A DNA stretch of 64,000 nt from contig NC_052158.1 in NCBI RefSeq assembly GCF_902713615.1, positions 32,157,990-32,221,989 of the forward strand, in the 5' to 3' direction. The DNA comes from Scyliorhinus canicula. Lineage: Eukaryota. Of the stretch, positions 1-53,095 are shown one piece after another; positions within the stretch are counted from its first letter, which is position 1; each line of letters begins with the position of its first letter. Below the pieces are notes generated by a model that was not told the origin of the DNA, searched no databases, and saw only the letters and a list, made by a program, of their open reading frames with translations. Both the position numbers and the translations under genes were made by a program.

Positions 1-1858
1 GGCTCTCAGGGACCTGGTCAAGAAGACGACAGAGTTCCAATGGTTCCCTGCCCACAAACACGAATCGTGGGAACTCAGGGCGAAGCTGACCGTGTTGGCA
101 TTTTTTGATCCGGCCAAAGAAACAAAGATTTCCACGGATGCCAGTCAATCCGGCATTGGAGCAGTGCTCCTTCAACGTGATGATGCCTCATCATGGCTCC
201 TGTTGCATACGCGTCACGTGCAATGACGCCTATCGAACAATGCTATGTGCAAATTGAAAAAGAGTACCTGGGCCTTCTTACCGGCGTCGTTAAATTCCAT
301 GACTATGTCTATGGACTCCCAAAGTTCACAGTCGAAGCAGACCACAGACTGTTGGTCAATATCATTCAAAAAGACCTTAACGACATGACCTCTCGCCTGC
401 GGTGTATTCTCCTTAAGCTCGGGCGTTACAACTTCGAGCTCGTCTACACCCCGGGCAACAAGTTCATTGACACTGACGCCCTCTCCTGGTCAGTCACCAT
501 ACCCTGCAACCCAGCGGGATTCATTTGTCAGGTTGATGCTCATGTGGCATTCGCTGCTTCCAATCTGCCTGCCACGGATGAACGACTCATCCAGATTCGT
601 TGTGAGATGGCCGATGACCCCCTGCTCCAACGTGTCATGCGCCACCTAACGGACGGGTGGTTCAAGGGCCAATGCCCTCAATTCTATAATGTTAAGGGTG
701 ACCTGACGGTAGTAGACGGGATTCTTCTCAAGCTGGACCGTATTGTCATCCCGCATAGCATGCACAACCTTGTCCTCTAGCAGCTCCATGAGGGCTACCT
801 GGGAGTGGAGGTGTCGCCAACAGGCCCGTGAAGCAGTGTACTGGCTTGGAATCAACGAGGACATAGCTAATGACATGCTCAACTGCCCAACATGTCAGCG
901 ATTCCAGCCGGCCCAACCAAGGGAAACCTTGCAACCTCATGAGTTGGTCACGTCTCCCTGGACCAAGGTGGGCATCGACCTGTTCCATGCTCTTGGCCGG
1001 GACTACATCCTCATTGTGGACTATTTCCCAAACTACCCGGAGGTGGTAAGGTTGCACGACCTCGCCTCAGCTGCGGTCATTCGTGTGTGTAAGAAAAACT
1101 CCGCTCGACACGGCATCCCACTCACGGTCATGTCAAACAATGGCCCCCGTTTTGCCAGTCAGGAGTGATCCAAGTTTGCCAGACGGTACAACATCACACA
1201 TGTCACGTCCAGTCCCCCTTATCCCCAATCCAATGGTAAAGCAGAGAAGGGAGTGCACATCATAAAACGGCTCCTGTGCAAGGCGGCCAATGCTGGTTCT
1301 GATTTTTACCTTGCCTTGCTTGCCTACTGCTCCGCCCCCTTGTCCACCAGCCTGTCACCGGCTCAACTACTCATGAATCGCACGCTGCGGACAACGATGC
1401 CGTCCATTCGTGTCCCGGACCTGGCCCACGTTCCGGTCCTTTGCCGGATGCAGCTGACTCGGGCCCAACACAAATCGGCCTACGACTCCTGTGCCACGGA
1501 TCTCCCTGCTCTGGCTCCCAATGACAACGTCCCTGTCCAGCTTCCAGATGGTCGCTTGTCCTCCACTGCTGTCGTGCTCAGACAAGTGGCCCCTTGTTCA
1601 TTCTTGGTTCGTCTACCGGACGGCTCTCTTCTGCGCCGAAATAGGCGGGCACTGCGACTCCTTCCGCGCTTGCCACATGATCTTCAGGTCCTGCCTCGCC
1701 ATCACGACGACCCCATCATGGACTTTGCAGATCTCCCTGTCGCTCTGCCACCCTCTAAGTCTGACACAGTCCAGCCCATTCCAGAACCGGCGGCTCTTGA
1801 CCCACCCTTGAGGCGGTCAACCAGAATTCGTCGCCCACCTCAGAGACTAAATTTATGA
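1..1858 (+). mobile_element. Ty3/Gypsy LTR retrotransposon, decayed 3' pol (RNase H, integrase)
   Basis: RNase H motifs STDASQSGIGAVLLQ and YASRAMTPIEQCYVQIEKE. Integrase PWTKVGIDLF, NNGPRF, YPQSNGKAEKGV and a LRRSTRIRRPPQRLNL tail. The frame is split by stops and frameshifts. Confidence 0.93.
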
Positions 1859-2078
1859 ACTGTCTGAATTCATGGACTCTGAATTGTTTTGTTGCTCTCT
1901 TTAATCAACTCACTGGTTTGCACATAATGTTGTTCTATCTACTATTTTGTTGCATACTGTTCACCTGCACACAACACCTTCCAATGTAAATAGATTAGTG
2001 TTTATGTACATAGTCTTGTAAATATGCTTGCACATGCCACACGGATATATTATTTATTACTATGAACACATTTTTTTA

Positions 2079-2161
2079 TAAAAGGGGGGGGAAGTCATAA
2101 TCGGCACATCGGTATATAATGGTGCAGAGACACACACTGACTGACACACTGCAAGACCAAT
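2079..2161 (+). mobile_element. Polypurine tract plus truncated 3' LTR of the Gypsy copy
   Basis: AAAAGGGGGGGGA is followed by (A)GTCATAAT...GCAAGACCAAT. This matches the first ~70 nt of the complete LTR at 34646-34246 (-). Confidence 0.8.
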
Positions 2162-3589
2162 ATATCTTTTACGCAGATGGGCATGCACTTTAAATATGGC
2201 ACCACGGCCTTGCCAGCTCTATCAGGCCCTGACATGCCAGAATGACGGCAGACACCCCCCCCCCCCCCCCCCCCCCCCCCCCCAGATCTGTGCTCAGAAT
2301 CCCTGAAAATGTGGTCTGAATTCCCGGTTATGTTTCTGGTGAGAAACACATCTGAACTGCTTCTAAAGCATTTACATCCTTTCCTACATAAAGACACACA
2401 GACTGTGCACAGTATTCCAGATGTGGCCTCACATGTACAACCACAACAAAACATCTCTACATTTATATTCCATTTCATTTGCAATAAATGGCAAAGTTCC
2501 ATTTGTCTTCCAAATTGTTTGCTATCCCTGTGGACTAACATTTTGTAATTCCTGTACCAGGACACCCAAAGTTCTGTAATCTCTCTACTGAAGTAATAGG
2601 AGGCCTTGTGGCACAATGGGTAGCTCCCCCTATCACTGAGGCAGAAGCTTCAAGTTTGTGTCCAATGTCAGGACTTGGTGGTCATGGAAACAGCATTCAA
2701 CACAATTCACAAGTTGATAATCAGCTCGGAAATCCTTCCACACTATTGCCCAAAGGGTAAAAAAAAGTACATAGGTGTGAAGATACGCAAACAACATTTA
2801 AATATTATGTTGCATTTCAGTTCTTCCTACCACCGTGGACAAGTTCATGCTTATCCCACGTATGACCCCAATGTACGGCAGAGAACTGGAACGAGATACC
2901 ACAACAATTTTGCAATTTGGAAACTGCGAGGAGGAAAGGCTACCTGCTTTCCCCGGCACCATCCCATCCGAGAAGTAATTCCGCTGACAAATATAGATAT
3001 TTTTTCACTGAAAAGAAACTTTATTATTAACACAGGACAAACTACATTAACATTGCCAAAAATACCTCACAGTTAACAGTTAAACAATTCTTAACAACAA
3101 AATGAAACACTTTAACTTCTAACATTCCTTCTCTATCTCTAATTAGGCAAAGCCCATGACAGATCAAAAGACACTTGTAAATAAAGTCAGCAAACACAGA
3201 GATATTTACAGTGCTCTTTGTGGAGAATTGCTTTCAGCGAAGGAACGAGACCCTTTCCAGGTCCAAAGACCTGGCTCCTCCCATTAATTACATCATCTGT
3301 GTCCCACTAACTGTCTTATAACCATCGTACAAAGGTTAAACACTTCCCCTCAATTATCTAAACCCCAGGGAGACTTGTTTCTGTAAACAAAACTCCATTA
3401 ACCCTCTATAGGAAAGCAATTGGTTATAATCAACTATTATCACACTTTTACAACATCTTAATTGCATCCTTTGCAGACTCACCACCTGCTTGACTGTTAA
3501 ACCCGGATTTATAAAAAAATTATTTCAACAGGTAAAAAAAAACTTATATATATATATATATATATAAAACAATTTCCTACATTGATCAC

Positions 3590-4055
3590 ACCATATTTCA
3601 CTCCCATTTGCCATATTTTTTGCCGAGTCATTTAACCTGTCTATATCCCTTGCAGATTTCTTATGTCCTCTTCACAAAATTTCTTATTTATCTTTTTGTC
3701 ACTGTCACATTTAGCAACCAAACATTAGGTGCCTTCTTCCAAATCATTGATATAAATTGTAACTAGTTGAGACTCCAGCATTGTTCCCCATGGCACTCCA
3801 CTACTCTCACCTTGCCAAGCTGAAAATTACATTTTTATCCCTCCTCTGTTTGCTGTTAGGTAACCATCCTTCTGTCCATGCTAAAATGTTATCTCTTGCA
3901 GAATGAGCTCGTATTTTGCATTGTAACCTTTGATGTGGAAAGTGCCTTCTGGAAATCTGAGTGCATCACAATCATAGGTTCCCCTTCATCCATGTTGCGT
4001 GTTACTTCCTCAAAGCTTTCCGAGAAATTCGTCAAACATGATTTCCCTTTCACAG
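3590..4055 (-). mobile_element. Decayed CR1 LINE RT fragment
   Basis: Reverse complement resembles CR1 ORF2 (DFQKALSTS, GVPWGTML, LVTIYINDL-like segments). Heavily mutated. Confidence 0.6.
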
Positions 4056-4060
4056 AACAT

Positions 4061-4802
4061 GGGTGGAATTCTCACATTTTGAGACTAAGTGTGGTAGCTG
4101 GCAGCTTCTGTCCCATTGGCCAGAATGGAGAAACCGAGTGCCCCAGATTCGGCACTCAGAACCTCATTAATTATACATTTTTCCTCAAATCTTCCTGGCA
4201 GCTGATTCATCCTCCTACCCTCAGTTGATGTATTCGAAATTCCCGACAGCAAGCTCCACCTCTGGGACCGCGGTGCAAACATATTCTGCACTTGAGGAAA
4301 TACGCAAATAATGTTGGATGTTACCGAGTGGAGACCCCTCGAGAAACTCGGGCAATGATTTTCCAGCCCCACCTTGCACTCCATTCCTTCTTGAACTGTG
4401 ATCCTTTGTTGTGGTGTGTGCATGTGTTCCACAGCACAGTCCTGTCCAGGAGGACAGGGACCCCTGTACTCTCAAACCCCAGGAACAGCACTCACCTCAA
4501 ACTTTTTGGTAACCTTCACTCTTTAGCAATTTGGTTTTAGACTGATGTAGTTTCATGCTGGCATGATACAAGATTGGAAGGCTGGACAGAATGGCAGTGG
4601 GTGGCTGGTTTAATGAGCATTCATGAGATGCAGATGACTGCAAATGGCATTCATGCCACAGCCAGTGGGAAGACCAACCCGCCATTGGGAGAATTACAAT
4701 GTGAGTTTATGCCAGTGTGTTTCTGACTGTTTGGCTCTCACTAGGTTCTCCAACCCTGCCCACCACTAAACCCACTACAGGCAGGATGGAAGAATTCCAC
4801 CC
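4061..4802. mobile_element. Non-autonomous TIR element (Harbinger-type MITE)
   Basis: Perfect 12-bp terminal inverted repeat GGGTGGAATTCT / AGAATTCCACCC. ACAT lies on both flanks. Confidence 0.7.
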
Positions 4803-4806
4803 ACAT

Positions 4807-5886
4807 GGCGAAATTCTCTAAAATTGGTGCGATAGCCCGATGTCTGCGTCAAAATCGGCGCGAACCACTCCGGCGTCGAGCCGCCAGGAAGTTGCGGAAT
4901 CCTCTGCCCTTGAAGGGGCTAACAGCGGCGTGACGCCAATCGCGACAGCGTGACCCATCACAGACGCGCGGGCCGTCATTTACGCCGTACGGCATCGCTC
5001 CACAAAAGACATCCCCGCCGGAGACTCGGCAGAATGGCCACCCGCCGTGCAGCGCCAAACTTCCAGGAGTGGGACATCGAGGTACTCCTGGGCACAGTAG
5101 AGCAGAGGATGGAGGCCCTGCACCCCGACATAGCCGCAGGTTCGCACCACACGTCAGCCGGGACCTGTGGAGGGAGGTGGCAGAGGTCGTCATCACCGTG
5201 GCCGTAACATCCAGGACAGGCAGCCAGGGTGAGTGCCCTCCACAATTTCCACCCCCCCCTCCCCCCCCAGATGGACGGCAAAGCCCTAGCTGAAAACCCC
5301 CCTCACCGATCCCACCCTGGCTACCAAATTCTCCAGCGCTGGTTTTTGGGCGGGGTGGATCACGCCACGCCGGTCGAAGGCCTTTGGCCAGGCCTCCCAG
5401 GCAATTCTCTGGCCCCAATGGACCGAGCGGCTGCCTGTTTTCGGCCAGTCCCGCGGGCGTGGATTAGACAAGGTCCATACTGGTGGGACCTGGCTTTGTG
5501 GGCAGCCTGCGGAGTCCGCGGGGGGCTCGGGGGGGGTCCCCCACGATGGCCTGGCCCGCGATCAGGGCCCACCGATCTGCGGGCGGGCCTGTGCCGTTGG
5601 GGCACTCTTTCCCTCCGCGCCGGCCTCTGTAAGGCTCTGCGATGGCCCGGTGTGGGGAAGAAACTCCCTGCGCATGCGCAGGAAACACAGCAGTGCTCCT
5701 GCGCATGCGCCACCTCGTGCCGGCTGTCGGAGGCCCTTCTGCGCCAGTTGGCGCGGCGCCAGCCACTCCAGCGCCAGCCTAGTGTGGAGGATTCCGCATC
5801 TTCCGGGCAGCCTGATGCCGGAGTGGTTCACGCCACTCTTTGGCGCTGGTCTGGCCCACCCCGTCGATTGCAGGATAATCCCGGCC
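4807..5886 (+). mobile_element. GC-rich Harbinger-derived element carrying a Myb/SANT-like gene remnant
   Basis: Degenerate termini GGCGAAATTCTC...GGATAATCCCGGCC. Nt 5031-5230 translate, with one frameshift, to MATRRAAPNFQEWDIEVLLGTVEQRMEALHP...DLWREVAEVVITVAVTSRTGSQ, which fits the Myb/SANT-like pattern of Harbinger partner proteins. Confidence 0.7.
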
Positions 5887-5957
5887 AAGGATTTATTTCT
5901 CGAGGGATAGAAAATATAAGTTGGGAAGTCAGGCCGAACCTGTATTGATTGTTATTT

Positions 5958-6648
5958 GAGCACTGTAGCATTGTGGATAGCACAATTGGGCAGCACGGTA
6001 GCATGGTGGTTAGCATAAATGTTTCACAGCTCCAGGGTCCCAGGTTTGATTCCCGGCTGGGTCACTGTCTGTGCGAAGTCTGCACGTCCTCCCCATGTGT
6101 GCGTGGGTTTCTCCGGGTGCTCCGGTTTCCTCCCACAGTCCAAAGATGTGCGGGTTAGGTGGATTGGCCATGATAAATTGCCCGTAGTGTCCTAAAAAGT
6201 AAGGTTATGGGGGGGTTGTTGGGTTACGGATATAGGGTGGATACGTGGGTTTGAGTGGGGTGATCATTGCTCGGCACAACATTGAGGGCCGAAGGGCCTG
6301 TTCTGTGCTGTACTCTTCTATGTTAATCGCTTCACAGCTCCTGGGTCCCAGGTTCGATTCCGGCTTGGGTCACTGTCTGTGCGGAGTCTGCACATCCTCC
6401 CCGTGTGTGCGTGGGTTTCCTCCAGGTGCTGCAGTTTCCTCCCACAGTCCAAAGATGTGCAGGTTAGGTGGATTGGCCATGATAAATTGCCCTTAGTGTC
6501 CAAAATTGCCCTTAGTGTTGGCTGGGGTTACTGGGTTATGGGGATAGGGTGGAGGTGTAACCTTGGGTAGGGTGCTCTTTCCAGGAGCCGGTGCAGACTC
6601 GATGGGCCGAATGGCCTCCTTCTGCACTGTAAATTCTATGATCTATGA
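5958..6648 (+). mobile_element. HE1-like tRNA-derived SINE with a second SINE (5988-6324) nested in its head
   Basis: The host head GCACTGTAGCATTGTGGATAGCACAATT breaks at 5987 and resumes AATCGCTTCACAGCTCC at 6325. The insert has its own head, box B and tail. The host ends in a CTATGA repeat. Confidence 0.88.
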
Positions 6649-6664
6649 CCCCGAGAGTACTGTG

Positions 6665-7135
6665 CACAGCTCTGATTTCCATATTGTATCAATGATATTG
6701 TGGCACTGGAGGTGGTGCAAAGATTGATTCGGATGATACCAGAAATGTGCGGGATTGCACATCAGGAGTGGTTTGACAAGCTGGGTATGTTTCCTCTTCG
6801 AAAAAGCAGGTCAAGAGGCGACCTAATAGAGGTCTCAAAAATTATGGAAGATTTTTATCGAGCAGATACAAAGAGAATGTTTCCTTTTGTGGGGTAGAGC
6901 AGAACTAGAGACGATTGATATACGAAAGTCACTGAGATTGCTAATACAAGAATGTGGAATTGGCTACCACAGGGGCTGGTTGAAGCAGACAGTATAGTTG
7001 TACCGAAGGGGAAGTGAGACAGGTAAGTGAGGGGAAAAGCAATATCGGATTACAATGGTAGATTTAGATGTGGAATGATGGGAGGAACTCGGGTGGAGCA
7101 CAAGCATGAACTGGTCGGGCTAAATTCTGTTTCGA
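6665..7135 (+). mobile_element. Decayed CR1 3' fragment
   Basis: LEVVQRLIRMIPEM...RSRGDLIEVSKIM matches the CR1 ORF2 C-terminus. Confidence 0.8.
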
Positions 7136-7394
7136 TGCCACACATCCTGTGTACTCCTGATTCCCTCTCTCTGAATCTTTCTGTCTTTCTCTGATTGTTA
7201 CTATGATTATTTCTGCCTCTGACTTTTTCTCTCCGATTCTCTCTTTCTCACTCCGTTGATTCTCCTGATATCACTTTCTGTTTGATTCTCCCTCTCTGAC
7301 TCTCTCTCTGTGATTCACTCTTTCTCACGTATTCTGATTCCATTTTTCTCATTCTTGATTCTCTCGCACTCCCTCTCTCCTGCCCCTCTAACAG

Positions 7395-7502
7395 GTCTGA
7401 AATCCCAGGTTATGGTTAATGTTAGGATTGTCTTTGGAGTCCTCGGGATCATCGCTGTGGTTGTCAACGCCGTTGTGGTTGTCATCATCTACTTGAAGAA
7501 AG
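7395..7502 (+). CDS. Transmembrane exon of a type I membrane protein, probably an MHC class I heavy chain
   Basis: Polypyrimidine tract plus AACAG acceptor and AAAG|GTAGGA donor. The exon is 108 nt, phase 1-1, and encodes LKSQVMVNVRIVFGVLGIIAVVVNAVVVVIIYLKK (hydrophobic span then basic stop-transfer). Confidence 0.78.
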
Positions 7503-7603
7503 GTAGGAATCGGAGAGACATTGACAGTTCCTCATTGGGGGAGGGGGGAATGTGTCTATGGTTCTGGAACGATCAAGGGGTGAGCAGTTCAGACTGAGGG
7601 AAA

Positions 7604-8216
7604 GGGCTCGGGTCAGGGTGCGAGTGAGGGTCTCGGGTCAGGGCGAGAGTGAGGGTCTCGGCTCAGGACGGGAGTGAGGGTCTCGGGTCAGGGCAGGAGT
7701 GAGGGGCTCGGGTCAGGATGGGAGTGAGGGTCTCGGGTCAGGGCGGGAGTGAGGGTCTCGGGTCAGGATGGGAGTGAGGGGCTCGGGTCAGGGCTGGAGT
7801 GAGGGTCTCGGCTCAGGGCGGGAGGGTCTCGGGTCAGGGCGGGAGTGAGGGTCTCGGGTCAGGGCGGGAGTGAGGGTCTCGCGTCCGGGCGGAGTGAGGG
7901 GCTCGGGTCAGGGCGGGAGTGAGGGGCTCGGGTCAGGGCTGGAGTGAGGGTCTCGGCTCAGGGCAGGAGTGAGGGTCGTGTCAGGGCGGGAGTGAGGGTC
8001 TCGGGTCAGGGCGGGAGTGAGGGTCTCGCGTCAGGCGGGAGTGAGGGGCTCGGGTCAGGACGGGAGTGAGGGGCTCGGGTCAGGGCGGGAGTGAGGATCT
8101 CGGGTCAGGGCGGGAGTGAGGGGCTCGGGTCAGGGCGGGAGTGAGGGGCTCGGGTCAGGGCGGGAGTGAGGGGCTCGGGTCAGGGCGGGAGTGAGGGTCT
8201 CGGGTCTGGGCGGGAG
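7604..8216 (+). repeat. 25-bp G-rich minisatellite, about 24 units
   Basis: Unit GGGTCAGGGCGGGAGTGAGGG(T/G)CTC is repeated in tandem with point variants. Confidence 0.97.
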
Positions 8217-8361
8217 AATTGGGCTCAACATTCTGTTAGAGGGGCTCAGTATGAGAAAGGGTCAATCTGTCCCTTTCACTCGGGGTTCCAGCATCTCTGA
8301 ATTTCTTTCAGTTTTTCGTCACTCACTGAAAATTCCTTGTTTAACATTCCTTGTTTTACAG

Positions 8362-8395
8362 GGAGAGGGAAGAGCGTCTAAAATCCTACAGAACA
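8362..8395 (+). CDS. First cytoplasmic exon (class I exon-6 equivalent) with an in-frame stop
   Basis: TTGTTTTACAG acceptor and A|GTAAGC donor. In phase 1 it reads G-R-G-K-S-V-*-N-P-T, with TAA at 8379-8381. Confidence 0.65.
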
Positions 8396-8460
8396 GTAAG
8401 CTGATGATCAAACACCCTCTGAATCTGTGTGTAACTGTGTGAATCATTCTTCATTCTACT

Positions 8461-8760
8461 TCAGGCACACTGAGTAACTAATTGTTCTCTCTCTCTGAAT
8501 GTGTGTGTCATCCTCTGTGTTTGTTTCTGTGTGTGTGTATCACACCCTCTGAGTGTACATGTATGACTGTGTCCCTCTGCTTCAGTAGGTATGTGTGTCA
8601 CCCTTTCACTCTGTGAATCCCTCTCTCTCGTCAGTCCGTCTGTCTTGCTCTCTGTCTGTGTCTGGCGGTGTGTGTATAACCCTCTTACTCCATGTTTGTG
8701 ACTTTCTGTCTCCTTCTGTTTTTGTGTCTTGCATGCTGTTTCTGTCTCTCTGAATGTGAA
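8461..8760. repeat. Degenerate (TG)/(TC) microsatellite-rich tract
   Basis: Interspersed TGTGTG and TCTCTC runs. Confidence 0.8.
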
Positions 8761-8790
8761 TTGTTTGTATAAGGCCTCTTTTATTAACAG

Positions 8791-8838
8791 CGTCAGATAA
8801 AATGGAATTCTCATCCACCTGCGCTACCAGTGCCTGAG
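8791..8838 (+). CDS. Second cytoplasmic exon (class I exon-7 equivalent)
   Basis: TTTTATTAACAG acceptor and G|GTATGA donor, 48 nt. In phase 1 it reads (T)SDKMEFSSTCATSA*, resembling my recollection of shark class I tails (TSDKAESSSNSSATA-like). Confidence 0.68.
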
Positions 8839-9972
8839 GTATGAATAATGTCGATTTATGTTGGGAGCAAATGCTTCTAGTTGGTACATCCTAGTTGGTG
8901 TAATAAATGTACAATCTGGAGGGTGGAATGGGAGCTCAGTGCATGTTCCTCAGTGTATAGTCATTAATGAGAAGCTCATTCAATTCAACACTGAGCTTTG
9001 AGACTGGCCTTTGAGAAATGACTGGTCTACAGTCTGAGGATGGAGATATCCTGGAGAGTTGGGGGGTTGCAGGGCAGGAACATCTCATTTGAGGCTGATG
9101 TCTCTTTCAGACTGGCCTTGAGGAGGTGGCTGGTCCTGTACAGTCTAGGGGTTGGGAGGTTTGAGTCTGGAAGCATCTAATCTTCGATGTGGCTTCCTGT
9201 CAGCTGATCAACATCCTTAAGGGAGTTCAGATGCCCAGAGCATCCGTTAAAATAGATTACTGGGGTTTAATGTTGTTGCTCTCCCGGGATTCTGAATTAC
9301 TGAAAGGAGTTTGTAGGATGTTGTGCACTGGGAGGGGTATGGATCTGATGGAGAACTTGTTTTGGACTCCAGACATTGAAGAGATTTACTGATCTTGGAG
9401 AGATTGCAATGTAGATTTAGCAGAATGATACCTGGTGGCCCAATGGTTAAAGTAGGAGGAGAGGTTAAAGAAGTTAGAAGGTCAAGGGCAATTTGATTGA
9501 GGCTTTCAATATATTAACAGAAATGGAGTAGATAGAGTGATAAACCATCCCTGCAGTTTGGGAGGCTTGGAGGGGGCATAGTCTAATTGAAACCTGCCTC
9601 ATGGAAACCGAAATTTGGAAATACTTCTGCACAAAACGGGTTGTAATGTTTTGAAACTCCCCTCCTGAAATTGAAATTGATGATCAATGAACTGCTAATA
9701 CATCCGCTTGAAAACCCCGACAAATCAAAAAAATTAGCAATGAGACAAATATAGAATATATATGGATATAGGTTTCACACACCAGGCAAGTTATCAATCA
9801 ATGATGGGACATGCTTTAGCGGGTAACTGGTGTTCCTGTGCCCTTCACTGGTTTCTGCTGGTGTTTGTGAGGTGGGTCTGTTGGATTTTGCTGCTGGTAT
9901 TTTTTGGGTGCTGTTGGGCCTGCTGGAATTTGCTGTCTTTCTATAACCACCCATGTCTTTCTCTTCCCCCAG

Positions 9973-10128
9973 TGTCCTCCTGTGTCCTGGGCTGGGAACC
10001 CAATGTTGCACTGCCGGAAATCATTTGGAGGAGTGGAAAAGAGCATTGAGCGCCATTGACTCTTTGACAACATTCAAAAATACGAGTTATAGAAAATGAA
10101 TAAAGTTGTTTATAATTAAATAAATAAA
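9973..10128 (+). other. Possible terminal 3'UTR exon with poly(A) signals
   Basis: TCTTTCTCTTCCCCCAG acceptor at 9972 and AATAAA at 10099, 10119 and 10123. It could instead belong to the LTR of the adjacent ERV. Confidence 0.35.
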
Positions 10129-10785
10129 GCCAGAGTGAGTGTGTCCGATCTGAAGTTAACATCTCAGTCACCCAGCCTGAGTTTGAATTAAGAGGGCAGT
10201 GAGCCCCATATGATGACCAGGATCAAGTGGATGAAGGGAGTATAAAATAAAGGACTGGGTAGCTGATGAATTCTGAGGGCATGTTCGAACCACCAATGTT
10301 GCAGACAAATTGTTACAGCAAAAGATAATTAAAATTTCAGAGGCAACGGCAACCTCCAAAAATCAGCCTTGAAGATTGTTCAGTAAACCTCATGTGCATA
10401 GACGAGGAGAGACTGAATGGGAAGATAGCGACAATGGTACCTGGGAACGGGTTTAAATAGATTAAGGAGGGACACTGTCTTGTCTTCTCCCCCACATTGG
10501 GGTCAGACCCCAAAACCGGTCCATTAACATGTTGATTATCTGAGACCTTGAAATGGCTGTCTCGGCCAGAATGGGAGGTGGCACTCAGGGCGTACCTAAG
10601 CCATAAATGGCCCAAATGGATAAATCATTTTGGGAAAGAATTAAAGGGCCTGGGACACACTGGACAGCGACAGTGGGAAGAAGCCCATAGGTAAATGCAT
10701 GCCTAAAAGTGAGACACCCGTGGCAATACTTACTTACACCCGAGAATTAAATGATAAAGAAATGGAGATTGAAAATTTAAAGTGA

Positions 10786-18768: not shown

Positions 18769-19059
18769 GGCCTAGTTTCAGCCGTTCAGAGGAGGAGGAG
18801 CAGTCTCTGGGTGAGTATAAAAACTCACTTTAACCCGGGGATCGAGGCCTAGTTTCGGGAGCCGTTCAGAGGAGGAGGAGCAGTCTCTGGGTGAGTATAA
18901 AAACTCACTTTAACCCGGGGATCGAGGCCTAGTTTCGGGAGCCGTTCAGAGGAGGAGGAGCAGTCTCTGGGTGAGTATAAAAACTCACTTTAACCCGGGG
19001 ATCGAGGCCTAGTTTCGGGAGCCGTTCAGAGGAGGAGGAGCAGTCTCTGGGTGAGTATA
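18769..19059 (+). repeat. 80-bp tandem monomers in the CR1 5'UTR (3 full units plus 1 partial)
   Basis: Units start at 18769 (77 bp), 18846, 18926 and 19006 and are nearly identical. Confidence 0.96.
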
Positions 19060-19199
19060 CAGACCTAACGGTAACTTCCTGTTTTCCACTTTTTTTCAAA
19101 CGTGACATCAGAGGGAAGCAGTGATCTGATTGGTTGATAACCAATCTGCCCCAAATTTAAAACTCGTAAACTTAAATTAAACAAATTAATTAATTAGAG

Positions 19200-20156
19200 A
19201 TGGCTGGTCAGGTGATGTGCTTAAGCTGCTTGATGTGGGAGCTGACAGATCCCATTGCGAGCTGCAGCGACCACATCTGCAGTAAGTGTTGGCTGCTCGA
19301 AGAACTCCGGCTCAGAGTTGATGAGCTGGAGTCTGAGCTTCACACACTGAGGCACATCCGGGAGGGGGAGGCTTACCTGGACACTTTGTTTCAGGAGGCA
19401 GTCACACCTGTCAGAGTAAATAGTTTAAATCCTGCCAGTGGCCAGGGACAGCAGGGTGTGACTGCAAGTCAGGCAGGTAAAGGGAACCAGCAGTCAGGAA
19501 CTCAGGAGCCTCAGCCCTTGACCCTGTCCAACAGGTACGAGGCACTTGCTCCCTGTGTGGATGGCGAACAGGGCTGCAGGAAGGATGAGTCAGCTGACCA
19601 AGGCACCATGGTTCAGCAGGCCATTCAAGGGGAGGAAGTAAATAGGCAAGTTGTAGTTGTAGGGGATTCTATTATCAGAGGGATAGATAGTATCCTTTGT
19701 GAGCAGGATAGAGGGTCCCGCATGGTATGTTGCCTGCCCGGTGCTAGGGTGCGGGACATCTCTGACCGGCTTGAAAGGATATTGGAGAGGGAGGGGGAGG
19801 ATCCAGTTGTTGTGGTCCATGTCGGTACCAACAACTTAGGCAAGTCTAGGAAAGAGGACCTGTTTAGAGATTATAAAGAGTTAGGATTCAAATTAAAAAA
19901 CAGGTCCTCAAGGGTCATAATCTCCGGATTACTGCCCGAGCCACGTGCAAATTGGCATAGGGAGGCAAGAATAAGGGAAGTTAACACGTGGCTGAAAGAG
20001 TGGTGTGGGAAAGAGGGGTTCCTTTTCATGGGACACTGGCATCAGTTTTGGGACAGGGGGGACCTATACCGTTGGGATGGTCTCCACCTGAACCGAGCTG
20101 GGACCAGTGTTCTGGCGAAAAGAGTAAATAGGGTGGTCAATAGGACTTTAAACTAG
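19200..20156 (+). CDS. CR1 ORF1p: Cys motif, coiled coil and SGNH esterase
   Basis: 318-aa ORF with CxxC...CxxC and a heptad region. SGNH blocks GDS, PGA, HVGTN and DGLH are present. Confidence 0.95.
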   Translation: MAGQVMCLSCLMWELTDPIASCSDHICSKCWLLEELRLRVDELESELHTLRHIREGEAYLDTLFQEAVTPVRVNSLNPASGQGQQGVTASQAGKGNQQSGTQEPQPLTLSNRYEALAPCVDGEQGCRKDESADQGTMVQQAIQGEEVNRQVVVVGDSIIRGIDSILCEQDRGSRMVCCLPGARVRDISDRLERILEREGEDPVVVVHVGTNNLGKSRKEDLFRDYKELGFKLKNRSSRVIISGLLPEPRANWHREARIREVNTWLKEWCGKEGFLFMGHWHQFWDRGDLYRWDGLHLNRAGTSVLAKRVNRVVNRTLN

Positions 20157-20290
20157 AGATTGGGGGGGAAGGGAAAGTCAGGGAACCAAGAGGTGAAGGA
20201 ATCAGTGGGAAGCGTAGCTGCTTAGGATTACAAAAAATCACGAAAAGACAGAGCTCAGGAGAGGTTACGATAGTCCCCATCTCACAAAAT

Positions 20291-34646: not shown

Positions 34647-37600
34647 TCCCCTTTTATAAAGAAATGTGTGGTTATGGTAATAAATAATGTGTGGTGAGAA
34701 TGTGCCTAACTATGTGTGGAGTGCGAAGGCATATTTACAAGATTATGTACATAAGAACTAAGCTATTTACATGGGAAGGTGCCTGATGCAGATGGACAGT
34801 ATGCAACAAAATAGTAACTAGAGCATCATTATATACAAACCAGGGAATCGACTTAACAAAGCAACGGAACAATTCAGAGAGTCCATAAATTCGAAAAGTT
34901 CATAAATTTAGTCTTTGAGGTGGGCGACGAATTTTGGTTGACCGCCTCAAGGGTGGGTCAGGAGCGGGCTGGAGTGCGTCAGTCAGAGAGTGGCAGAGCG
35001 ACAGGGAGCTCTGCAAATTCCATGGCAGGGTTGTCATGACGGCGAGGCGGGACTTGGAGATCACGTGGCGAGCGTGGAATGAGATGGAGTGCACGCCGCT
35101 TGCATCGCAGATGAGAGCCATCCAGTAGACGAGCCAGGAATGAGCGGGGGGGCCACTTGTCGGAGGACAACAGCGGTGGCAGACTAGCCACCATCCGGAA
35201 GATGGACGCAGACGTTGTCATCGGGAGCCAGAGCAGGGAGATCGGTTGCACGGGAGTCATAGGCCGCCTTGTGCTGGGCGTGAGACAGCTGCATCCGGTG
35301 AAAGACCGGAATGTGGTCGAGGTCTGGGACATGGATGGACGGCCCCATCATCCTCAGCGTGCCATTCATGAGTAGTTGAGCTGGCGACAGGCCAGTGGAC
35401 AAGGGGGCAGAGCAGTAGGCCAGCAAGGCAAGGTTAAAACAGAACCAGAATCGGCAGCCTTGCATAGGAGCCGTTTGGCGACATGTACTCCCTTCTCTGC
35501 TTTGCCGTTGGATTGGGGGTACAGGGGACTGGACGTTACATGGGCAAAATTGTACCACCTGGCAAAGTTGGACCATTCTTGGCTGGCGAAGCAGGGGCCA
35601 TTGTCTGACATGACCGTGAGCGGGATGCCGTGTCAAGTAAAGGTTGCTTTACATGCACAAATGACTGCAGCCGAGGTGAGGTCATGTAACCGTATCACCT
35701 CCGTGTAATTCAAGAAGTAGTCCACAATTAGGACATTGTCTCGACCAAGCGCATGGAACAGGTCGATCCCCACCTTGGTCCACGGTGCCGTGACCAACTC
35801 ATGGGGCTGCAGGGTTTCACGTGGCTGCGCCGGCTGGAAACGCTGACAGGTGGGGCAGTTTTGCACGGTGTTGGCTATGTCCTCGTTAATGCCAGGCCAG
35901 TACACCGCCTCTCGGCCCGTTGGCAGCACTTCTCCACTCCCAGGTAGCCCTTATGTAGCTGTTCCAGGACAAGCTGGTGCATGCTATGCGGGATGACAAT
36001 GCAGTCCACTTTTGGAAGAACCACGTCTGCTACCACCAGATCATCTCTGACATTATAGAATTGAGGGCATTGGCCCTTGAGCCCCCCGTTCGTTAGGTGG
36101 CGCTTGACACGCTGGAGCAAGGGGACGGCAGCTGTCTCGTGACTAATTTGGACGAGGCGTTCATCGGAGGCAGGTAGATTGGAGGCAGCGAATGCCACAT
36201 GGGCAAATCCTGGCAAACAAATCCCGCTGGGTCACATGGAGTGGTGACAGACCGGGAGATGGCGTCAGCAACAGTGAGTTCCTTGCCCGGGGTGTATACC
36301 AGCTGGAAGTCGTAGCGTCTGAGCTTGAGAAGAATACGCTGGAGGTGAGGTGTCATGTCGTTCAGGTCTTTTTGAATGATATTGACCAGTGGTCTATGGT
36401 CTGTCTTGACAGTGAACTGAGGTAGTCCGTAGACATAATCATGGAATTTAACGACTCCGGTCAGAAGGCCCAGGCACTCCTTTTCAATCTGCGCATAACG
36501 CTGTTCGGTGGGGGTCATCGCACGTGACGCGTATGCCACGAGGGCCCGTGATGAGGCCTCATCACATTAAAGGAGCTCCAATGCCCGATTGACTGGCATC
36601 TGTAGAGATTTTGGTCTTCTTGGCTGGATCAAAAAAAGCTAAGACCGGGGCCGTGGTCAGCTTTGCCTTGAGTTCCCTCCATTCGTGTCCATGGGCAGGG
36701 AGCCATTGGAAGTCTGTTGTCTTCCTGACCAGGTTCCTGTGAGCCGTGGTGTGAGAGACGAGGTTAGGGATGAATTTCCCTAAGACGTTGACCATGCCCA
36801 AGAAGCGGAGGACCGCCTTTTTGTCCTCCCGTGTCTTCATAGCCTTGATGGCAGCAACCTGGTCCGCATCTGGCTGCACACCGAATTGGGAGATGTGGTC
36901 TCCGAGGAATTTAATTTCAGTTTGACCAAAGATGCATTTGGCCCTATTGAGGCGGAGGCCATGCTCATGTACCCATCTGAAGATGCGCTGGAGGCGATTA
37001 ACGTGCTCTTGCGGGGTGGTGGACCAGATGATTATGTCATCGACATAGACGCGAACGCCTTCAATACCTTCCATCATCTGTTCCATAATCCTATGGAACA
37101 TTTCTGATGCAGAGATGATCTCAAACGGCATCCTGTTGTAGCAATATCTTCCAAAGGAGGTATTAAATGTGCAGAGTTTCCTGCTGGATTCGTCGTGCTG
37201 GATTTGCCAGAATCCCTTTGAGGCGTCAAGTTTGGTAAAGAACTTGGCGCGAACCATCTCACAGGTGAGTTCTTCGCGCTTCGGAATGGGATAGTGCTCT
37301 CTCATAATATTGCGGTTGAGGTACTTGGGATCAATGCATATTCTCAGTTCGCCGGAAGGTTTTTTTACACATACCATGGAGCTGACCCAGTCGGTCGGTT
37401 CCGTGACTCTGGAAATCACTCCTTGGTCCTGGAGGTCCTGCAGCTGCTGCTTGAGCCGGTCTTTAAGGGGCGCTGGGACCCTGCGAGGTGCGTGCACCAC
37501 AGGTGTGGCATTTGGTTTCAATAAAATCTTGTAGGTGTACGGGAGCGTGCCCATGCCCTCGAAAACATCATGGTATTGGCTAATAATGGCGTCGTGCTGC

Positions 37601-50442: not shown

Positions 50443-51858
50443 CTATCTCGTTGCACTGATATTCTTGTACTGACACAGGAGGAGACGCTTGAAAGTTTTC
50501 TTGAATGTTGGATTGCACAGCGCATAGCAGGCTGGGTTGACGGTGCTGTTAATGTAAAATATCCAATATCCAATAATCCAGACCGTGTTGGGGACACAGG
50601 CTGAGCAGAAGGTGTCGATGAGAACGAGGACATTGTATGGGCTCCAAGTGATGATAAACGCCAGCAGAATAGCCAGAACGGTCTGTGTCACCTTCTGCTC
50701 TCGGGATACAGTTCCCTTCTTTTTCTTAGCTGGGATATCAGTCACTGTAATGATCTTATTGTCTACCCTGATCTCTCCATCATTCCCACCCTTACTGGCG
50801 ATAACTGGCACCATTCTTGTTGTGGTGTCACAGTGGTTATTCTTTTTAAACTTGCTGACTATTTTCAAGCAGGAGAGTTTGGAGTTGTCCATCCTGAAAC
50901 AGGTTGGAGTAGTGGATGTGCTCTCCTGTATCACCAATTGTTTCTTCTGCTTTGATTGGGCCCCACTGGGGGAAGTTGACTCAATGACGAGCTCCTCTCC
51001 TTGGCCACAATTATCACTTATTATTTCTCCAGTCATTTTGCTCTTTTGCATCTTGACCTCTGGTAAGCCATCAGGAGCATTTGAAAAGTTGTTATTATTC
51101 GGCTCCATTATTTTGCCCTTCGCTGCACGATGAGAAACGGTCCTCTTGCTCGATTCGGACTCCTTTTTATCTTCCATTATTCGACTTTTGCTGGCACGAG
51201 ATATTTTCACGTATAAAATCATCATGATGAACACAGGGAGGTAGAAGGCACCTATGGCAGTGCCAAAAGTGACAACTGGATTTGAGAAAAACTGTATATG
51301 ACACTCGCCCTCGCCGACTGTCCGCTCCCCTACGATGAACTGCCAGAAGAGAATGGCAGGAGCCCACAGGATAAACGACACCACCCAAACAGCAGCAATC
51401 ATCAATCCTGCCATTTTTGCTGTTCTCCTCACGGGGTAGCTGAGGGGCTTTGTCACGCAGAAGTAGCGGTCAAAGCTGATGACCAGGAGGCTCATGGACG
51501 AGGCATTACTGACAACATAATCTAGAGCAAGCCACAAGTCACATACCACCGGGCCCAAAGGCCAGTAGCCAATCAGAGTGTAAATGGTGAATAGATTCAT
51601 GGACACACCGACAATCAAATCAGCACAGGCCAAGCTAAAGATAAAGTAATTGTTAATAGTTTGCAATTGTCTGTTTACTTTGATAGAAACAATGACCAGG
51701 ATGTTTCCAATAATTGTCAACACGCTCAAAGATCCTGTCACAATCACAGCGAAGACCAGCTCGACTGTTTTATAAGGACTCCCTGTTTCAGTGACAACCA
51801 GGTCTGTTGGATTGCTGAGAGATTGACCTGTCTGTGTCGAGTTAGCCGCCATTCCCAT
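50443..51858 (-). CDS. chrm2: Muscarinic acetylcholine receptor M2-like, single coding exon
   Basis: Intact 7TM ORF: [48 protein letters not shown] and an M2-type end YKNISATR. Start ATG at 51858 or 51852 (the ORF-track start at 51876 is GTG). Splice acceptor at 51899-51900. Orthologue versus paralogue is unresolved. Confidence 0.93.
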
Positions 51859-53095
51859 CTGATGTGTAGTTAGCACTGATGAGGCATAAGTGTAGAAACT
51901 AAAAGAAAAATTGATTAGGAAACAGATTTCAGATGAAGTTAAAGGACAACTGGTACCTCATTGACGTTCTGCCGGCAAGACCTTCAATATCTTTGGCAGG
52001 AGGGACTCTGTTTTAATTAGGAATTATTTCATGGGCCGTTTCCTGTACAATTGATTATGAACTAATAGTTAATTACTTCTGTCGAACTGAATGAAGATGT
52101 TGATGAGCGACATTGCAGAGATGTCTCTCAATGTGTTAAATCCATTGATCCAATCACCTGCGAGCTCTGCAAATGTTCACCTGTTCATGGAAGAAAGGTT
52201 TGACCCCTGTATTTCCTTTATGTTCATGTCTCAAGGTCACAAATTCCTGTAAGCCCATAACATCCAGGTCTACTCGGGAAGTGATGTTAGAAGAACGGTT
52301 GCACCAGTGTCACTGCTCTCTCAGAGACTGAACAACCACCCTATCCAATAGGTTTTCAGTCATTCAGATGGAAAGCAGGGACTTGGAGCTTCACTACTGG
52401 GATGAGGGAAAAAAGTATCTGAGATTATGCAGATATCATGCCTTTCAAAGCAGATAGCCATTGGGTCACATTAATTGATGCCTAATACCAGTTTTAATGC
52501 TTTAATGTATCTAATTATGTAACTTACATGTTTTATGATGCTGTCGTGCTAAATACAAATGCAAGAATGATTTCCAGATGTTGGTATTTCAAAACAAATG
52601 TAGGAAACACATCAGGGGATATAAAATGACCAACATTTCACTGAAGCTGGCACTGTTAAAGAAACATCATGCTTCATATTGTGTGTTACTGAATGCTTAA
52701 ATAGTTCATTTATCAATATTAAATATCTCAGCAAGAATTCTCAATATTGTTCAAACTTGATTTAAGGCATTGTAAAGGAAATATACAGGAAGAAAATGCT
52801 GAGTTAGGATAGTGGGGATAAGGGCATGAGAGAGGAAGACAGAATGGATGATAAAACAAGAAGGATGAAAGAAAATGGGACAGAGAGGGAGGTGGAAATG
52901 TCACAGAGAAGAAACTGTAGACTACGAAACAGGAGAATTAGTAAAAGAAATTAAAGTGGAACCACTATTTGCGATGGGCGTACCAGAGTAAGATATAGCA
53001 GGAGGAGAAAATGATGTCATTGTTTCTGCATGTCTGAAGTGTATTTGGAGTTCAGGGCATAGAGTAAAATTAATTGGACATTAATTGAAAATTAA

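What the first reader, a model, noticed from the sequence alone, without database searches (positions are those of the whole stretch)
7395..8838. MHC class I-like 3' end whose conserved cytoplasmic Tyr codon is a stop
Seen: a 108-nt TM exon, a 34-nt exon and a 48-nt exon, all with canonical splice sites. The middle exon reads K-S-V-TAA-N-P-T and is one base longer than a phase-preserving 33 nt. The last exon reads TSDKMEFSSTCATSA*. Established: class I heavy-chain genes have short phase-1 cytoplasmic exons (33 and 48 nt in HLA-A) with a conserved Tyr, and HLA-G is truncated by a stop in exon 6. From memory, shark class I tails read about K-x-G-Y-N-P-A-K-T-S-D-K. Inference: TAC>TAA removed the Tyr motif. 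This is either a tail-truncated non-classical class I (an HLA-G-like convergence) or a pseudogene. The alpha1-alpha3 exons are not in the window.
Basis: partly seen in the sequence, partly recalled or inferred. Interest (0 to 1): 0.72.

Follow-up and report, generated by a model that had tools for sequence, protein, structure and literature searches.

The report
Catshark class I gene with cut-off tail
This is the 3' end of a real, transcribed small-spotted catshark non-classical MHC class I gene (UBA family) in which the codon for the tail tyrosine conserved in class I molecules has become a stop; its messenger RNA is also built like that of human HLA-G, a neat but modest case of convergence in a gene that is already annotated.

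Summary
Exon 5 (TM, 7395-7502, 108 nt), exon 6 (8362-8395, 34 nt) and an exon-7-like 48-nt exon (8791-8838) have canonical splice sites, and TAA (8379-8381) is in frame. RNA-type contigs from two studies join exon 5 exactly to 8362 and carry the TAA and the extra base.

The RefSeq catshark protein XP_038672762 (323 aa, intact leader, alpha1-3 and TM) ends ...IIYLKKGRGKSV, exactly at this stop. Related shark class I tails read KKGRGKS[D/A]YNPTNTSDKGDSSSSSS, so the stop replaces the conserved Tyr and exon 6 is one base longer than the family's 33 nt.

A tree puts the gene in the clade of horn shark O19480 and nurse shark O19479, which is the UBA non-classical lineage, not classical UAA.

The one junction seen splices exon 6 to a further terminal exon (9973 to about 10140, with polyA signals) and skips the 48-nt exon. 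Stop in exon 6, exon 7 left out and exon 8 untranslated is the published HLA-G layout.

My reading is a tail-less, probably functional UBA gene (about 0.6) rather than a transcribed decaying copy (about 0.3). The scan has no earlier follow-up of this stretch. Interest is modest.

The parts
1..7394 (+). 3' part of intron 4 (alpha3 to TM) of the class I gene. It is filled with repeats, including a Ty3/gypsy pol remnant at 184-1855.
   Evidence: No alpha1-3 similarity in the window. The gene range is 29,988 nt. RT_RNaseH and Integrase_H2C2 hits.
7395..7502 (+). Exon 5, 108 nt, phase 1. It encodes the connecting peptide, the TM helix and the first basic residues (GLKSQVMVNVRIVFGVLGIIAVVVNAVVVVIIYLKK).
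   Evidence: Sequence and splice sites. Identical to the C-terminal part of RefSeq proteins P0001/P0121. Its last 30 nt are the loose ends of the RNA contigs joined to exon 6.
7603..8216 (.). Minisatellite in intron 5: 25-bp unit, 24.9 copies, 89% matches. Each unit holds a donor-like A|GTGAGG.
   Evidence: Tandem Repeats Finder and the sequence.
8362..8395 (+). Exon 6, 34 nt against 33 nt implied by the family. It encodes (G)RGKSV, then the stop. The extra base lies within 8391-8395 (ACA GAA CA, where the family protein NPTN-T implies ACA AAC A).
   Evidence: The acceptor at 8362 and the donor after 8395 are both used in RNA contigs of X20 and X25, with 0 differences. Family tails.
8379..8381 (+). 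TAA stop at the position of the conserved cytoplasmic Tyr codon. It leaves an 8-residue tail, KKGRGKSV.
   Evidence: Translation. The RefSeq protein ends here. Tyr stands at this column in UBA and UAA tails of sharks and rays.
8791..8838 (+). Exon 7 homologue, 48 nt, (T)SDKMEFSSTCATSA*. It keeps its splice sites but is skipped in the one junction seen and is untranslatable behind the stop.
   Evidence: Sequence. Similar to family exon 7 (TSDKGDSSSSSSANH; nurse shark SDETEFSDSPAVS, 7/13). Depth 0 in both RNA assemblies, and the joint 8395 to 9973 skips it.
9973..10140 (+). PolyA signals at 10099, 10115 and 10123. The end coordinate is approximate.
   Evidence: Joint 8395 to 9973 with GT..AG ends in an X25 contig. 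Strong pyrimidine tract and AG before 9973. PolyA signals. Homology to the tails of TM-to-exon-8 isoforms of other sharks.

Best explanation
The window holds exons 5-8 of a small-spotted catshark non-classical MHC class I gene of the shark UBA lineage (RefSeq XP_038672762-5 and -768). A single-base change turned the conserved tail tyrosine codon in exon 6 into TAA.

Shown:
- The heavy chain ends after an 8-residue tail (KKGRGKSV). It lacks the Y-N-P-T tyrosine motif and the serine-rich C-terminus that the related shark class I proteins compared here carry.
- Behind the stop, the tail exons have drifted: there is a one-base insertion in exon 6, and exon 7 has diverged from the paralogues' sequence.
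- The mRNA splices exon 6 straight to the terminal exon 8.
- The rest of the protein (leader, alpha1-3 with both disulfide pairs and the N-glycan site, TM) is intact.

Inferred:
- The product is a membrane-bound class I-like molecule that cannot use tyrosine-based endolysosomal sorting or internalisation. It is therefore likely to stay longer at the surface and not to sample endosomal ligands, as described for HLA-G.
- Skipping exon 7 leaves the stop 14 nt from the last exon junction. This is inside the 50-55 nt window that escapes nonsense-mediated decay in mammals. Including exon 7 would make the distance 62 nt.
For: Exon 5 to exon 6 and exon 6 to exon 8 junctions, and the TAA with the extra base, are seen with 0 differences in RNA-type contigs of two studies.

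The RefSeq protein ends ...IIYLKKGRGKSV, carries Pfam MHC_I (7e-49) and C1-set (1.3e-14), and its gene spans 29,988 nt.

Family tails are KKGRGKS[D/A]YNPTNTSDKG.SSSSSS in catshark paralogues, S. torazame, Mustelus, horn shark O19480 and nurse shark O19479. UAA tails read GYNPAKTSDK.

The tree places the gene in the 99% SH-aLRT clade with O19480 and O19479, with the UAA references outside. The UBA name for the Bartl 1997 genes comes from PMC12562908.

Divergence from the nearest paralogue is uneven: alpha1 62/87, alpha2 73/89 and alpha3 85/89 identical. There is no frame break in 323 codons, against one stop and one frameshift in the 82 nt of exons 6-7.

S. torazame P0123 has the same TM subtype and a similar gene length (31.5 kb). 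It is also intact and also lacks the canonical tail in its RefSeq model.

The HLA-G layout is described in PMC3021195. The role of the conserved Tyr320 in endolysosomal trafficking and cross-presentation is in the abstract of PMC12518231.
Against: - There is no protein-level evidence.
- The gene's own branch is about four times longer than those of its sister paralogues (0.20 against about 0.05).
- It has changes at 7 of 119 positions that are invariant in 13 relatives.
- It has an Asn inside the TM helix. All three points fit relaxed constraint.
- Raw reads of one oligo-dT RNA run gave nothing.
- Exon 7 skipping rests on one contig, and the X20 contig stops at 8395, so other 3' forms may exist.
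- Orthology with S. torazame P0123 is not supported by the whole-protein tree, in which genes cluster by species. It rests on the TM exon alone.
- No shark DNA outside the window could be fetched, so neither dN/dS nor the age of the stop could be measured.
- The NMD rule is established in mammals, not in sharks.
Confidence: 0.6

Rival explanations
1. It is a transcribed, decaying duplicate (a young pseudogene). The nonsense mutation was the first of several lesions, the gene is no longer under selection, and RefSeq simply reports the longest frame left.
For: - Two lesions in the tail: the stop and a +1 base.
- Exon 7 diverged from the paralogues, 5 of 14 residues alike.
- A long private branch.
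- Private replacements at otherwise invariant sites (Q>N in IPREQW; GGI>EGE; E>A, Q>K and R>Q in alpha3).
- A polar Asn in the TM helix.
- UBA is a multicopy family in which copies can be spared (PMC10751288).
Against: - 323 codons have no stop or frameshift, and both Cys pairs and the NQS glycosylation site are kept.
- Divergence is concentrated in alpha1 and low in alpha3, not uniform. Gene conversion could mimic this.
- The share of changes at invariant sites is no higher than in intact-tail relatives such as P0017 (8/120) or O19480 (7/119).
- The gene is correctly spliced and assembled in RNA data of two studies.
- A similar tail-less but intact gene exists in S. torazame.
Confidence: 0.3
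2. The stop is a segregating null or variant allele of an otherwise full-tailed UBA gene, seen here because of the individuals sampled.
For: Only three data sets (the assembly and two RNA studies) were checked at base level. Class I loci often carry null alleles.
Against: All three sources carry both TAA and the extra base. The extra base and the diverged exon 7 behind the stop suggest that the region has been untranslated for some time.
Confidence: 0.07
3. The frame is rescued. An alternative acceptor 4 nt downstream (exon starting at 8366, 30 nt) would read EGRASKILQN-TSDKMEFSSTCATSA without a stop. Skipping exon 6 would give KK-ASDKMEFSSTCATSA.
For: Both forms are in frame on paper (my reading). 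Exon-6-skipping models exist for other sharks, for example basking shark P0031 and perhaps S. torazame P0123.
Against: Both RNA contigs use 8362, not 8366, and both contain exon 6. All RefSeq products of the gene end at GRGKSV. Neither rescued form would restore the tyrosine.
Confidence: 0.03

Closest known systems
Shark UBA non-classical MHC class I lineage (horn shark O19480 and nurse shark Gici-11 O19479, Bartl et al. 1997; multicopy UBA cluster of Verissimo et al. 2023, PMC10751288)
   Same: - 73% and 67% identity over the query, against about 54% to the UAA references.
- Inside the same 99%-supported clade.
- Same exon layout, and the same tail text up to the stop (KKGRGKS).
- It lies megabases away from the UEA/UGA/class II genes of the same chromosome, with a further class I gene 143 kb off. 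This fits the separate multicopy UBA cluster.
   Different: - The tail ends at the Tyr codon.
- Exon 6 is 34 nt.
- Exon 7 is skipped.
- The TM exon is of a distinct subtype (GLKS-QV..., two residues shorter before the helix, Asn in the helix), shared only with S. torazame P0123.
- K146-equivalent is Ser, where other UBA have Arg.
Human HLA-G
   Same: Premature stop in exon 6 giving a very short tail without the endocytosis tyrosine, exon 7 absent from the mRNA, and exon 8 serving as 3'UTR (PMC3021195, against here).
   Different: - It is not an orthologue. This gene sits inside a shark-only lineage, so the likeness is convergent.
- The HLA-G stop is at the start of exon 6 (6-residue tail); here it is the seventh codon, exactly the Tyr codon.
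- Nothing is known here of receptors, tissue restriction or soluble isoforms.
Classical shark class I, UAA (nurse shark 6LUP chain, Triakis O46821)
   Same: Same domain structure, Y7, R84, W147, Y159 and Y171 equivalents, both disulfides, and the same ancestral tail motif Y-N-P-[AT]-x-T-S-D-K.
   Different: Only about 54% identical and outside the UAA clades. The Y59, T143 and K146 equivalents are F, I and S. There is no tail.

Membership tests
MHC class I heavy chain | alpha1-alpha2 peptide-binding superdomain and a C1-set alpha3 domain | tested here: met
   The RefSeq protein that ends at this window's stop (P0121) matches Pfam MHC_I at 7e-49 (residues 17-191) and C1-set at 1.3e-14.
MHC class I heavy chain | Conserved disulfide cysteines in alpha2 and alpha3, and the N-glycosylation site at the end of alpha1 | tested here: met
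   NGCEL...VECIDWL, LSCVV...YSCQV and NQS are present.
MHC class I heavy chain | Phase-1 TM exon followed by short phase-1 cytoplasmic exons (33 and 48 nt) and a terminal exon | tested here: met
   Exons of 108, 34 (33+1) and 48 nt plus the terminal exon at 9973.
Shark UBA lineage | Groups with the founding UBA sequences (Bartl 1997: horn shark and nurse shark) to the exclusion of UAA | tested here: met
   99% SH-aLRT clade with O19480 and O19479, with UAA references in separate clades. That these are 'UBA' is taken from PMC12562908, not from the original paper.
Shark UBA lineage | Lies in the multicopy UBA cluster set apart from the UDA/UEA cluster, flanked by c4 and rxrb | tested here: inconclusive
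   Earlier notes place UGA, UEA and class II genes 6-10 Mb away and another class I gene 143 kb away. The flanking c4 and rxrb genes were not seen. The window's other gene is a muscarinic M2-like receptor.
Classical class I (UAA) | Full set of peptide-terminus anchors (Y7, Y59, R/Y84, T143, K146, W147, Y159, Y171) | tested here: not met
   The equivalents of residues 59, 143 and 146 are F, I and S.
HLA-G-type tail-less class I (a likeness in working, not kinship) | Premature stop in exon 6 that removes the tail tyrosine | tested here: met
   TAA at 8379-8381 at the Tyr column.
HLA-G-type tail-less class I (a likeness in working, not kinship) | [quoted passage not shown] | tested here: inconclusive
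   One contig joins 8395 to 9973, and exon 7 has depth 0 in two RNA assemblies. Only one junction was seen and there are no read counts.
HLA-G-type tail-less class I (a likeness in working, not kinship) | Orthology with primate MHC-G | tested here: not met
   The gene is nested in a shark-only clade.
HLA-G-type tail-less class I (a likeness in working, not kinship) | Slower internalisation and longer surface life | not testable with these tools
   This needs cell-biological assays.
Pseudogene | Frame-breaking lesions in the exons that encode the mature ectodomain or TM | tested here: not met
   P0121 is a 323-residue open frame, colinear with intact relatives.

The most novel reading that the evidence does not exclude
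A shark UBA class I gene has independently arrived at the full HLA-G gene plan: a stop in exon 6 at the conserved tyrosine, exon 7 dropped from the mRNA so that the stop escapes nonsense-mediated decay, and exon 8 as UTR. It has been kept as a working tail-less surface molecule since before the split of S. canicula and S. torazame. This would mean that losing the endocytic tail is a recurrent, selected route to a specialised class I function across 450 million years of vertebrates.
Probability: 0.3. Interest if true: 0.55.

Novelty: new variant of a known kind. Interest (0 to 1): 0.38.

Why it matters
The tail tyrosine is the one cytoplasmic residue of class I molecules kept from sharks to humans. 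In mice it steers the molecule through endolysosomes for cross-presentation.

A naturally tail-less but otherwise intact family member in a shark, sitting next to full-tailed paralogues, offers a ready-made comparison for asking what the tail did in the oldest jawed vertebrates.

The match with HLA-G, down to the skipped exon 7, suggests that the mRNA layout follows from the position of the stop (avoidance of nonsense-mediated decay) rather than being a primate oddity.

The significance is limited. The gene and its short product are already in RefSeq, UBA is a described multicopy family, short-tailed non-classical class I genes are known, and function is untested.

Tried and rejected
- A 62-residue read-through query (X at the breaks) found no candidate in the big protein collection.
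- The 35-residue TM exon found nothing among 1.84 billion representatives.
- Pfam on the tail gave only noise.
- The gene's protein was reached only by padding the TM peptide with an unrelated window ORF in a two-row profile, to get past the length filter. That hit had E = 0.5 and counts only because its C-terminus is letter-for-letter the window's exons.
- No shark DNA outside the window could be fetched. The look-up of encoding contigs knew the genes of P0121, P0123 and P0129 but served no DNA, and P0001 and P0005 were not on record. Paralogue and orthologue exon 6 DNA, dN/dS and the age of the stop therefore remain unmeasured.
- The two UBA/UDA papers of Almeida et al. (PMC8454915, PMC7002201) are not held, so I cannot say whether tail variants of UBA were already described.
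- Raw RNA run X22 and contig set X32 gave nothing on 8225-10200.
- I rejected an alternative acceptor at 8366 that would remove the stop: RNA uses 8362.
- I rejected an assembly error: two independent RNA assemblies agree.
- I rejected a retrocopy as the source of the spliced contigs: the contigs are identical to this locus and RefSeq models the same junction.
- The new C-terminus is neither a canonical KKxx/KxKxx ER-retrieval signal (it is R-G-K-S-V) nor a class I PDZ ligand.
- The likeness of the S. torazame P0123 tail (ASAKAARPPLPEV) to this exon 7 read in two frames (ASDK.....HPPALPVPE) is suggestive only. tblastn did not rank it above chance hits.

Full report
**What is in the sequence.** On the + strand there are three small exons with canonical AG/GT borders.
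- Exon 5 is 7395-7502 (108 nt).
- Exon 6 is 8362-8395 (34 nt).
- A third exon is 8791-8838 (48 nt).

Read in phase 1, the first exon gives a connecting peptide, a hydrophobic helix and a basic stop-transfer: LKSQVMVNVRIVFGVLGIIAVVVNAVVVVIIYLKK. With the carried-over G, the second exon reads G-R-G-K-S-V-TAA-N-P-T-E plus two bases. The stop is at 8379-8381. The third exon reads (T)SDKMEFSSTCATSA-TGA only in the frame that a 33-nt second exon would have handed on. With 34 nt it reads H-V-R-stop.

**Are the exons used?** Contig sets of small runs labelled as probable RNA were laid on 8225-10200.
- In two studies (X20, X25) a contig carries ...CGTTGTGGTTGTCATCATCTACTTGAAGAA + AG + GGAGAGGG..., which is the end of this gene's TM exon joined exactly to 8362.
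- I had noticed an alternative acceptor four bases downstream that would give a 30-nt, stop-free exon. It is not used.
- Both contigs match 8360-8395 with no difference, so the TAA and the extra base are real in at least two data sets besides the assembly.
- The X25 contig then jumps from 8395 to 9973 (GT..AG, 1,577 nt skipped).
- The 48-nt exon has depth 0 in both assemblies.
- The X20 contig stops exactly at 8395, which may mean a branch in its assembly graph.
- One raw oligo-dT run gave no reads.

At 9973 a strong pyrimidine tract and AG precede a stretch with AATAAA/ATTAAA at 10099, 10115 and 10123.

**What gene is it?** Short queries failed. A profile padded to pass the length filter pulled out one protein. 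It is NCBI 'MHC class I-related gene protein-like isoform X2 [Scyliorhinus canicula]', and its last 46 residues are letter for letter exon 5 plus exon 6 up to the stop.
- Its cluster mate, isoform X1 (XP_038672762-5, 323 aa), is a complete heavy chain with leader, alpha1, alpha2, alpha3 and TM.
- It matches Pfam MHC_I at 7e-49 and C1-set at 1.3e-14.
- The gene spans 29,988 nt.
- This agrees with an earlier first-reader note of an alpha2 exon and a repeat-filled intron 3 a few kb upstream of the window.
- It also agrees with the absence of any alpha1-3 similarity inside the window.

**The tail in the family.** 231 relatives were found. Their C-termini read as follows.
- Catshark paralogues: ...KKGRGKSDYNPTNTSDKGGSSSSSS... 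and ...KKGRGKRGYNPTNTSGNGDSSS...
- S. torazame: ...KKGRGKSAYNPTNTSDKGDSSSSSSANH
- Mustelus: ...GRGKSDYNPT/AN...
- Horn shark O19480: ...TGTSGYNPTKTSDKGESSSSSSANA
- Nurse shark O19479: ...GQVKSNYSPTDTSDETEFSDSPAVS
- Classical UAA: ...GYNPAKTSDK.ESSSNSSATA

This gene reads GRGKSV-stop-NPTE-(+1)-TSDKMEFSSTCATSA. The stop therefore stands exactly in the conserved Tyr column. The family's exon 6 must be 33 nt (NPTN-T, where this gene has NPTE plus one base, within 8391-8395). The 48-nt exon is the homologue of exon 7, with its stop at the family position.

The original codon (TAC or TAT) could not be checked, because no paralogue DNA was obtainable.

**Exon 8.** Read in the frame of a TM-to-exon-8 splice, 9972-10037 gives VSSCVLGWEPNVALPEIIWRSG. 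This is 12/22 identical to the C-terminus of a white shark RefSeq isoform (VSSQVLTINPGISVPEISGRSG) and similar to the corresponding basking shark tail; horn shark and S. torazame isoforms end in tails of the same type. This confirms 9973 as the family's terminal exon. It also hints, in passing, at a second, tyrosine-less tail used by other members.

**Lineage.** In a maximum-likelihood tree of 53 cartilaginous-fish class I proteins, the gene lies in a 99% SH-aLRT clade with horn shark O19480 and nurse shark O19479. The UAA references (Triakis O46821, nurse shark 6LUP chain, horn shark O19481) fall outside this clade.
- A 2025 review gives Bartl et al. 1997 as the source of the expanded shark 'UBA' family, 'derived from the UAA family' (PMC12562908).
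- A 2023 genome study describes a multicopy UBA cluster set apart from the UDA/UEA cluster (PMC10751288).
- The position here, megabases from the UGA/UEA/class II genes noted earlier on the same chromosome and 143 kb from another class I gene, fits that picture.
- The anchor residues for peptide ends are partly replaced: F59, I143 and S146. This is in keeping with a non-classical gene.

**Gene or pseudogene?**

For a working gene:
- 323 codons have no break, while the 82 nt of exons 6-7 carry a stop and a frameshift.
- Both disulfide pairs and the glycosylation site are kept.
- Divergence from the nearest paralogue is graded: alpha1 62/87, alpha2 73/89 and alpha3 85/89 identical.
- The share of changes at positions invariant in 13 relatives (7/119) is no higher than in full-tailed relatives (P0017 8/120, O19480 7/119).
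- The gene is spliced and present in RNA assemblies of two studies.
- S. torazame has one UBA gene (P0123, 334 aa, 31.5-kb gene) with the same unusual TM subtype. It is also intact and also ends in a non-canonical short tail in its RefSeq model.

For decay:
- The gene's own branch is about four times longer than those of its sisters (0.20 against about 0.05).
- It has private changes in otherwise invariant motifs.
- It has an Asn in the TM helix.

Caveats:
- Gene conversion among tandem copies (genes cluster by species in the tree) could explain the conserved alpha3, and it blurs orthology.
- Without DNA of relatives I could not compute dN/dS or date the stop.

I put a functional tail-less gene at about 0.6 and a transcribed decaying copy at about 0.3.

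**How it would work.** Shown: the protein ends KKGRGKSV.

Established elsewhere:
- The single conserved tail tyrosine (Y320) of class I directs endolysosomal trafficking and cross-presentation in mice (PMC12518231).
- HLA-G has a premature stop in exon 6. It lacks the endocytosis motif, stays longer in the ER and on the surface, always lacks exon 7 in its mRNA and leaves exon 8 untranslated (PMC3021195).

Inferred:
- The catshark molecule should likewise be poorly internalised and should not sample endosomes.
- With exon 7 skipped the stop is 14 nt from the last junction. With exon 7 included it would be 62 nt, beyond the 50-55 nt limit of the mammalian NMD rule. The skipping could therefore be what keeps the mRNA stable. 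This is untested in sharks and rests on one junction.

**Novelty and verdict.** The gene is a UBA family member already in RefSeq. It is a new variant of a known kind and of modest interest.

Noticed in passing
window 9973-10037 (+): Read in the frame of a TM-to-exon-8 splice, the '3'UTR exon' encodes VSSCVLGWEPNVALPEIIWRSG. This is 12/22 identical to the C-terminal tail of a white shark RefSeq isoform and similar to the basking shark one; horn shark and S. torazame isoforms carry tails of the same type. A second, tyrosine-less cytoplasmic tail made by skipping exons 6-7 may be conserved across sharks.
   Followed up: partly
window 7603-8216: Intron 5 holds a G-rich 25-bp minisatellite (24.9 copies, 89% matches). 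Each unit contains a splice-donor-like A|GTGAGG. Earlier notes report donor-derived minisatellites filling intron 3 of this gene and of a neighbour 143 kb away.
   Followed up: no
window 7395-7502 (+): The TM helix of this gene has an Asn in mid-membrane (IIAVVVNAVVVV) and an Arg at its outer edge. Both are absent from paralogues and from S. torazame P0123. This could be drift, or a site for helix-helix contact.
   Followed up: no
window 184-1855 (+) and about 34900-36570 (-): Ty3/gypsy-type pol remnants (RT_RNaseH, Integrase_H2C2), broken over several frames. The first sits in intron 4 of the class I gene.
   Followed up: partly
window 18769-23164 (+): An apparently intact CR1/L2-type LINE: an 80-bp x 3.7 tandem repeat (18769-19059), ORF1 of 320 codons with a GDSL esterase domain (19194-20153), and an open 1007-codon ORF2 with endonuclease and reverse transcriptase domains (20144-23164).
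   Followed up: partly
window 50446-51957 (-): A single-exon open frame of 504 codons for a muscarinic acetylcholine receptor. The best match is human M2 (E 2.5e-189 to PDB 6u1n). It is an unexpected neighbour for an MHC class I gene.
   Followed up: partly
P0123 (S. torazame XP_072331370), not in the window: The only S. torazame UBA protein with this gene's TM subtype ends KK-ASAKAARPPLPEV. This looks like exon 6 skipped and exon 7 read partly in another frame, which would mean the canonical tail was lost there too.
   Followed up: partly
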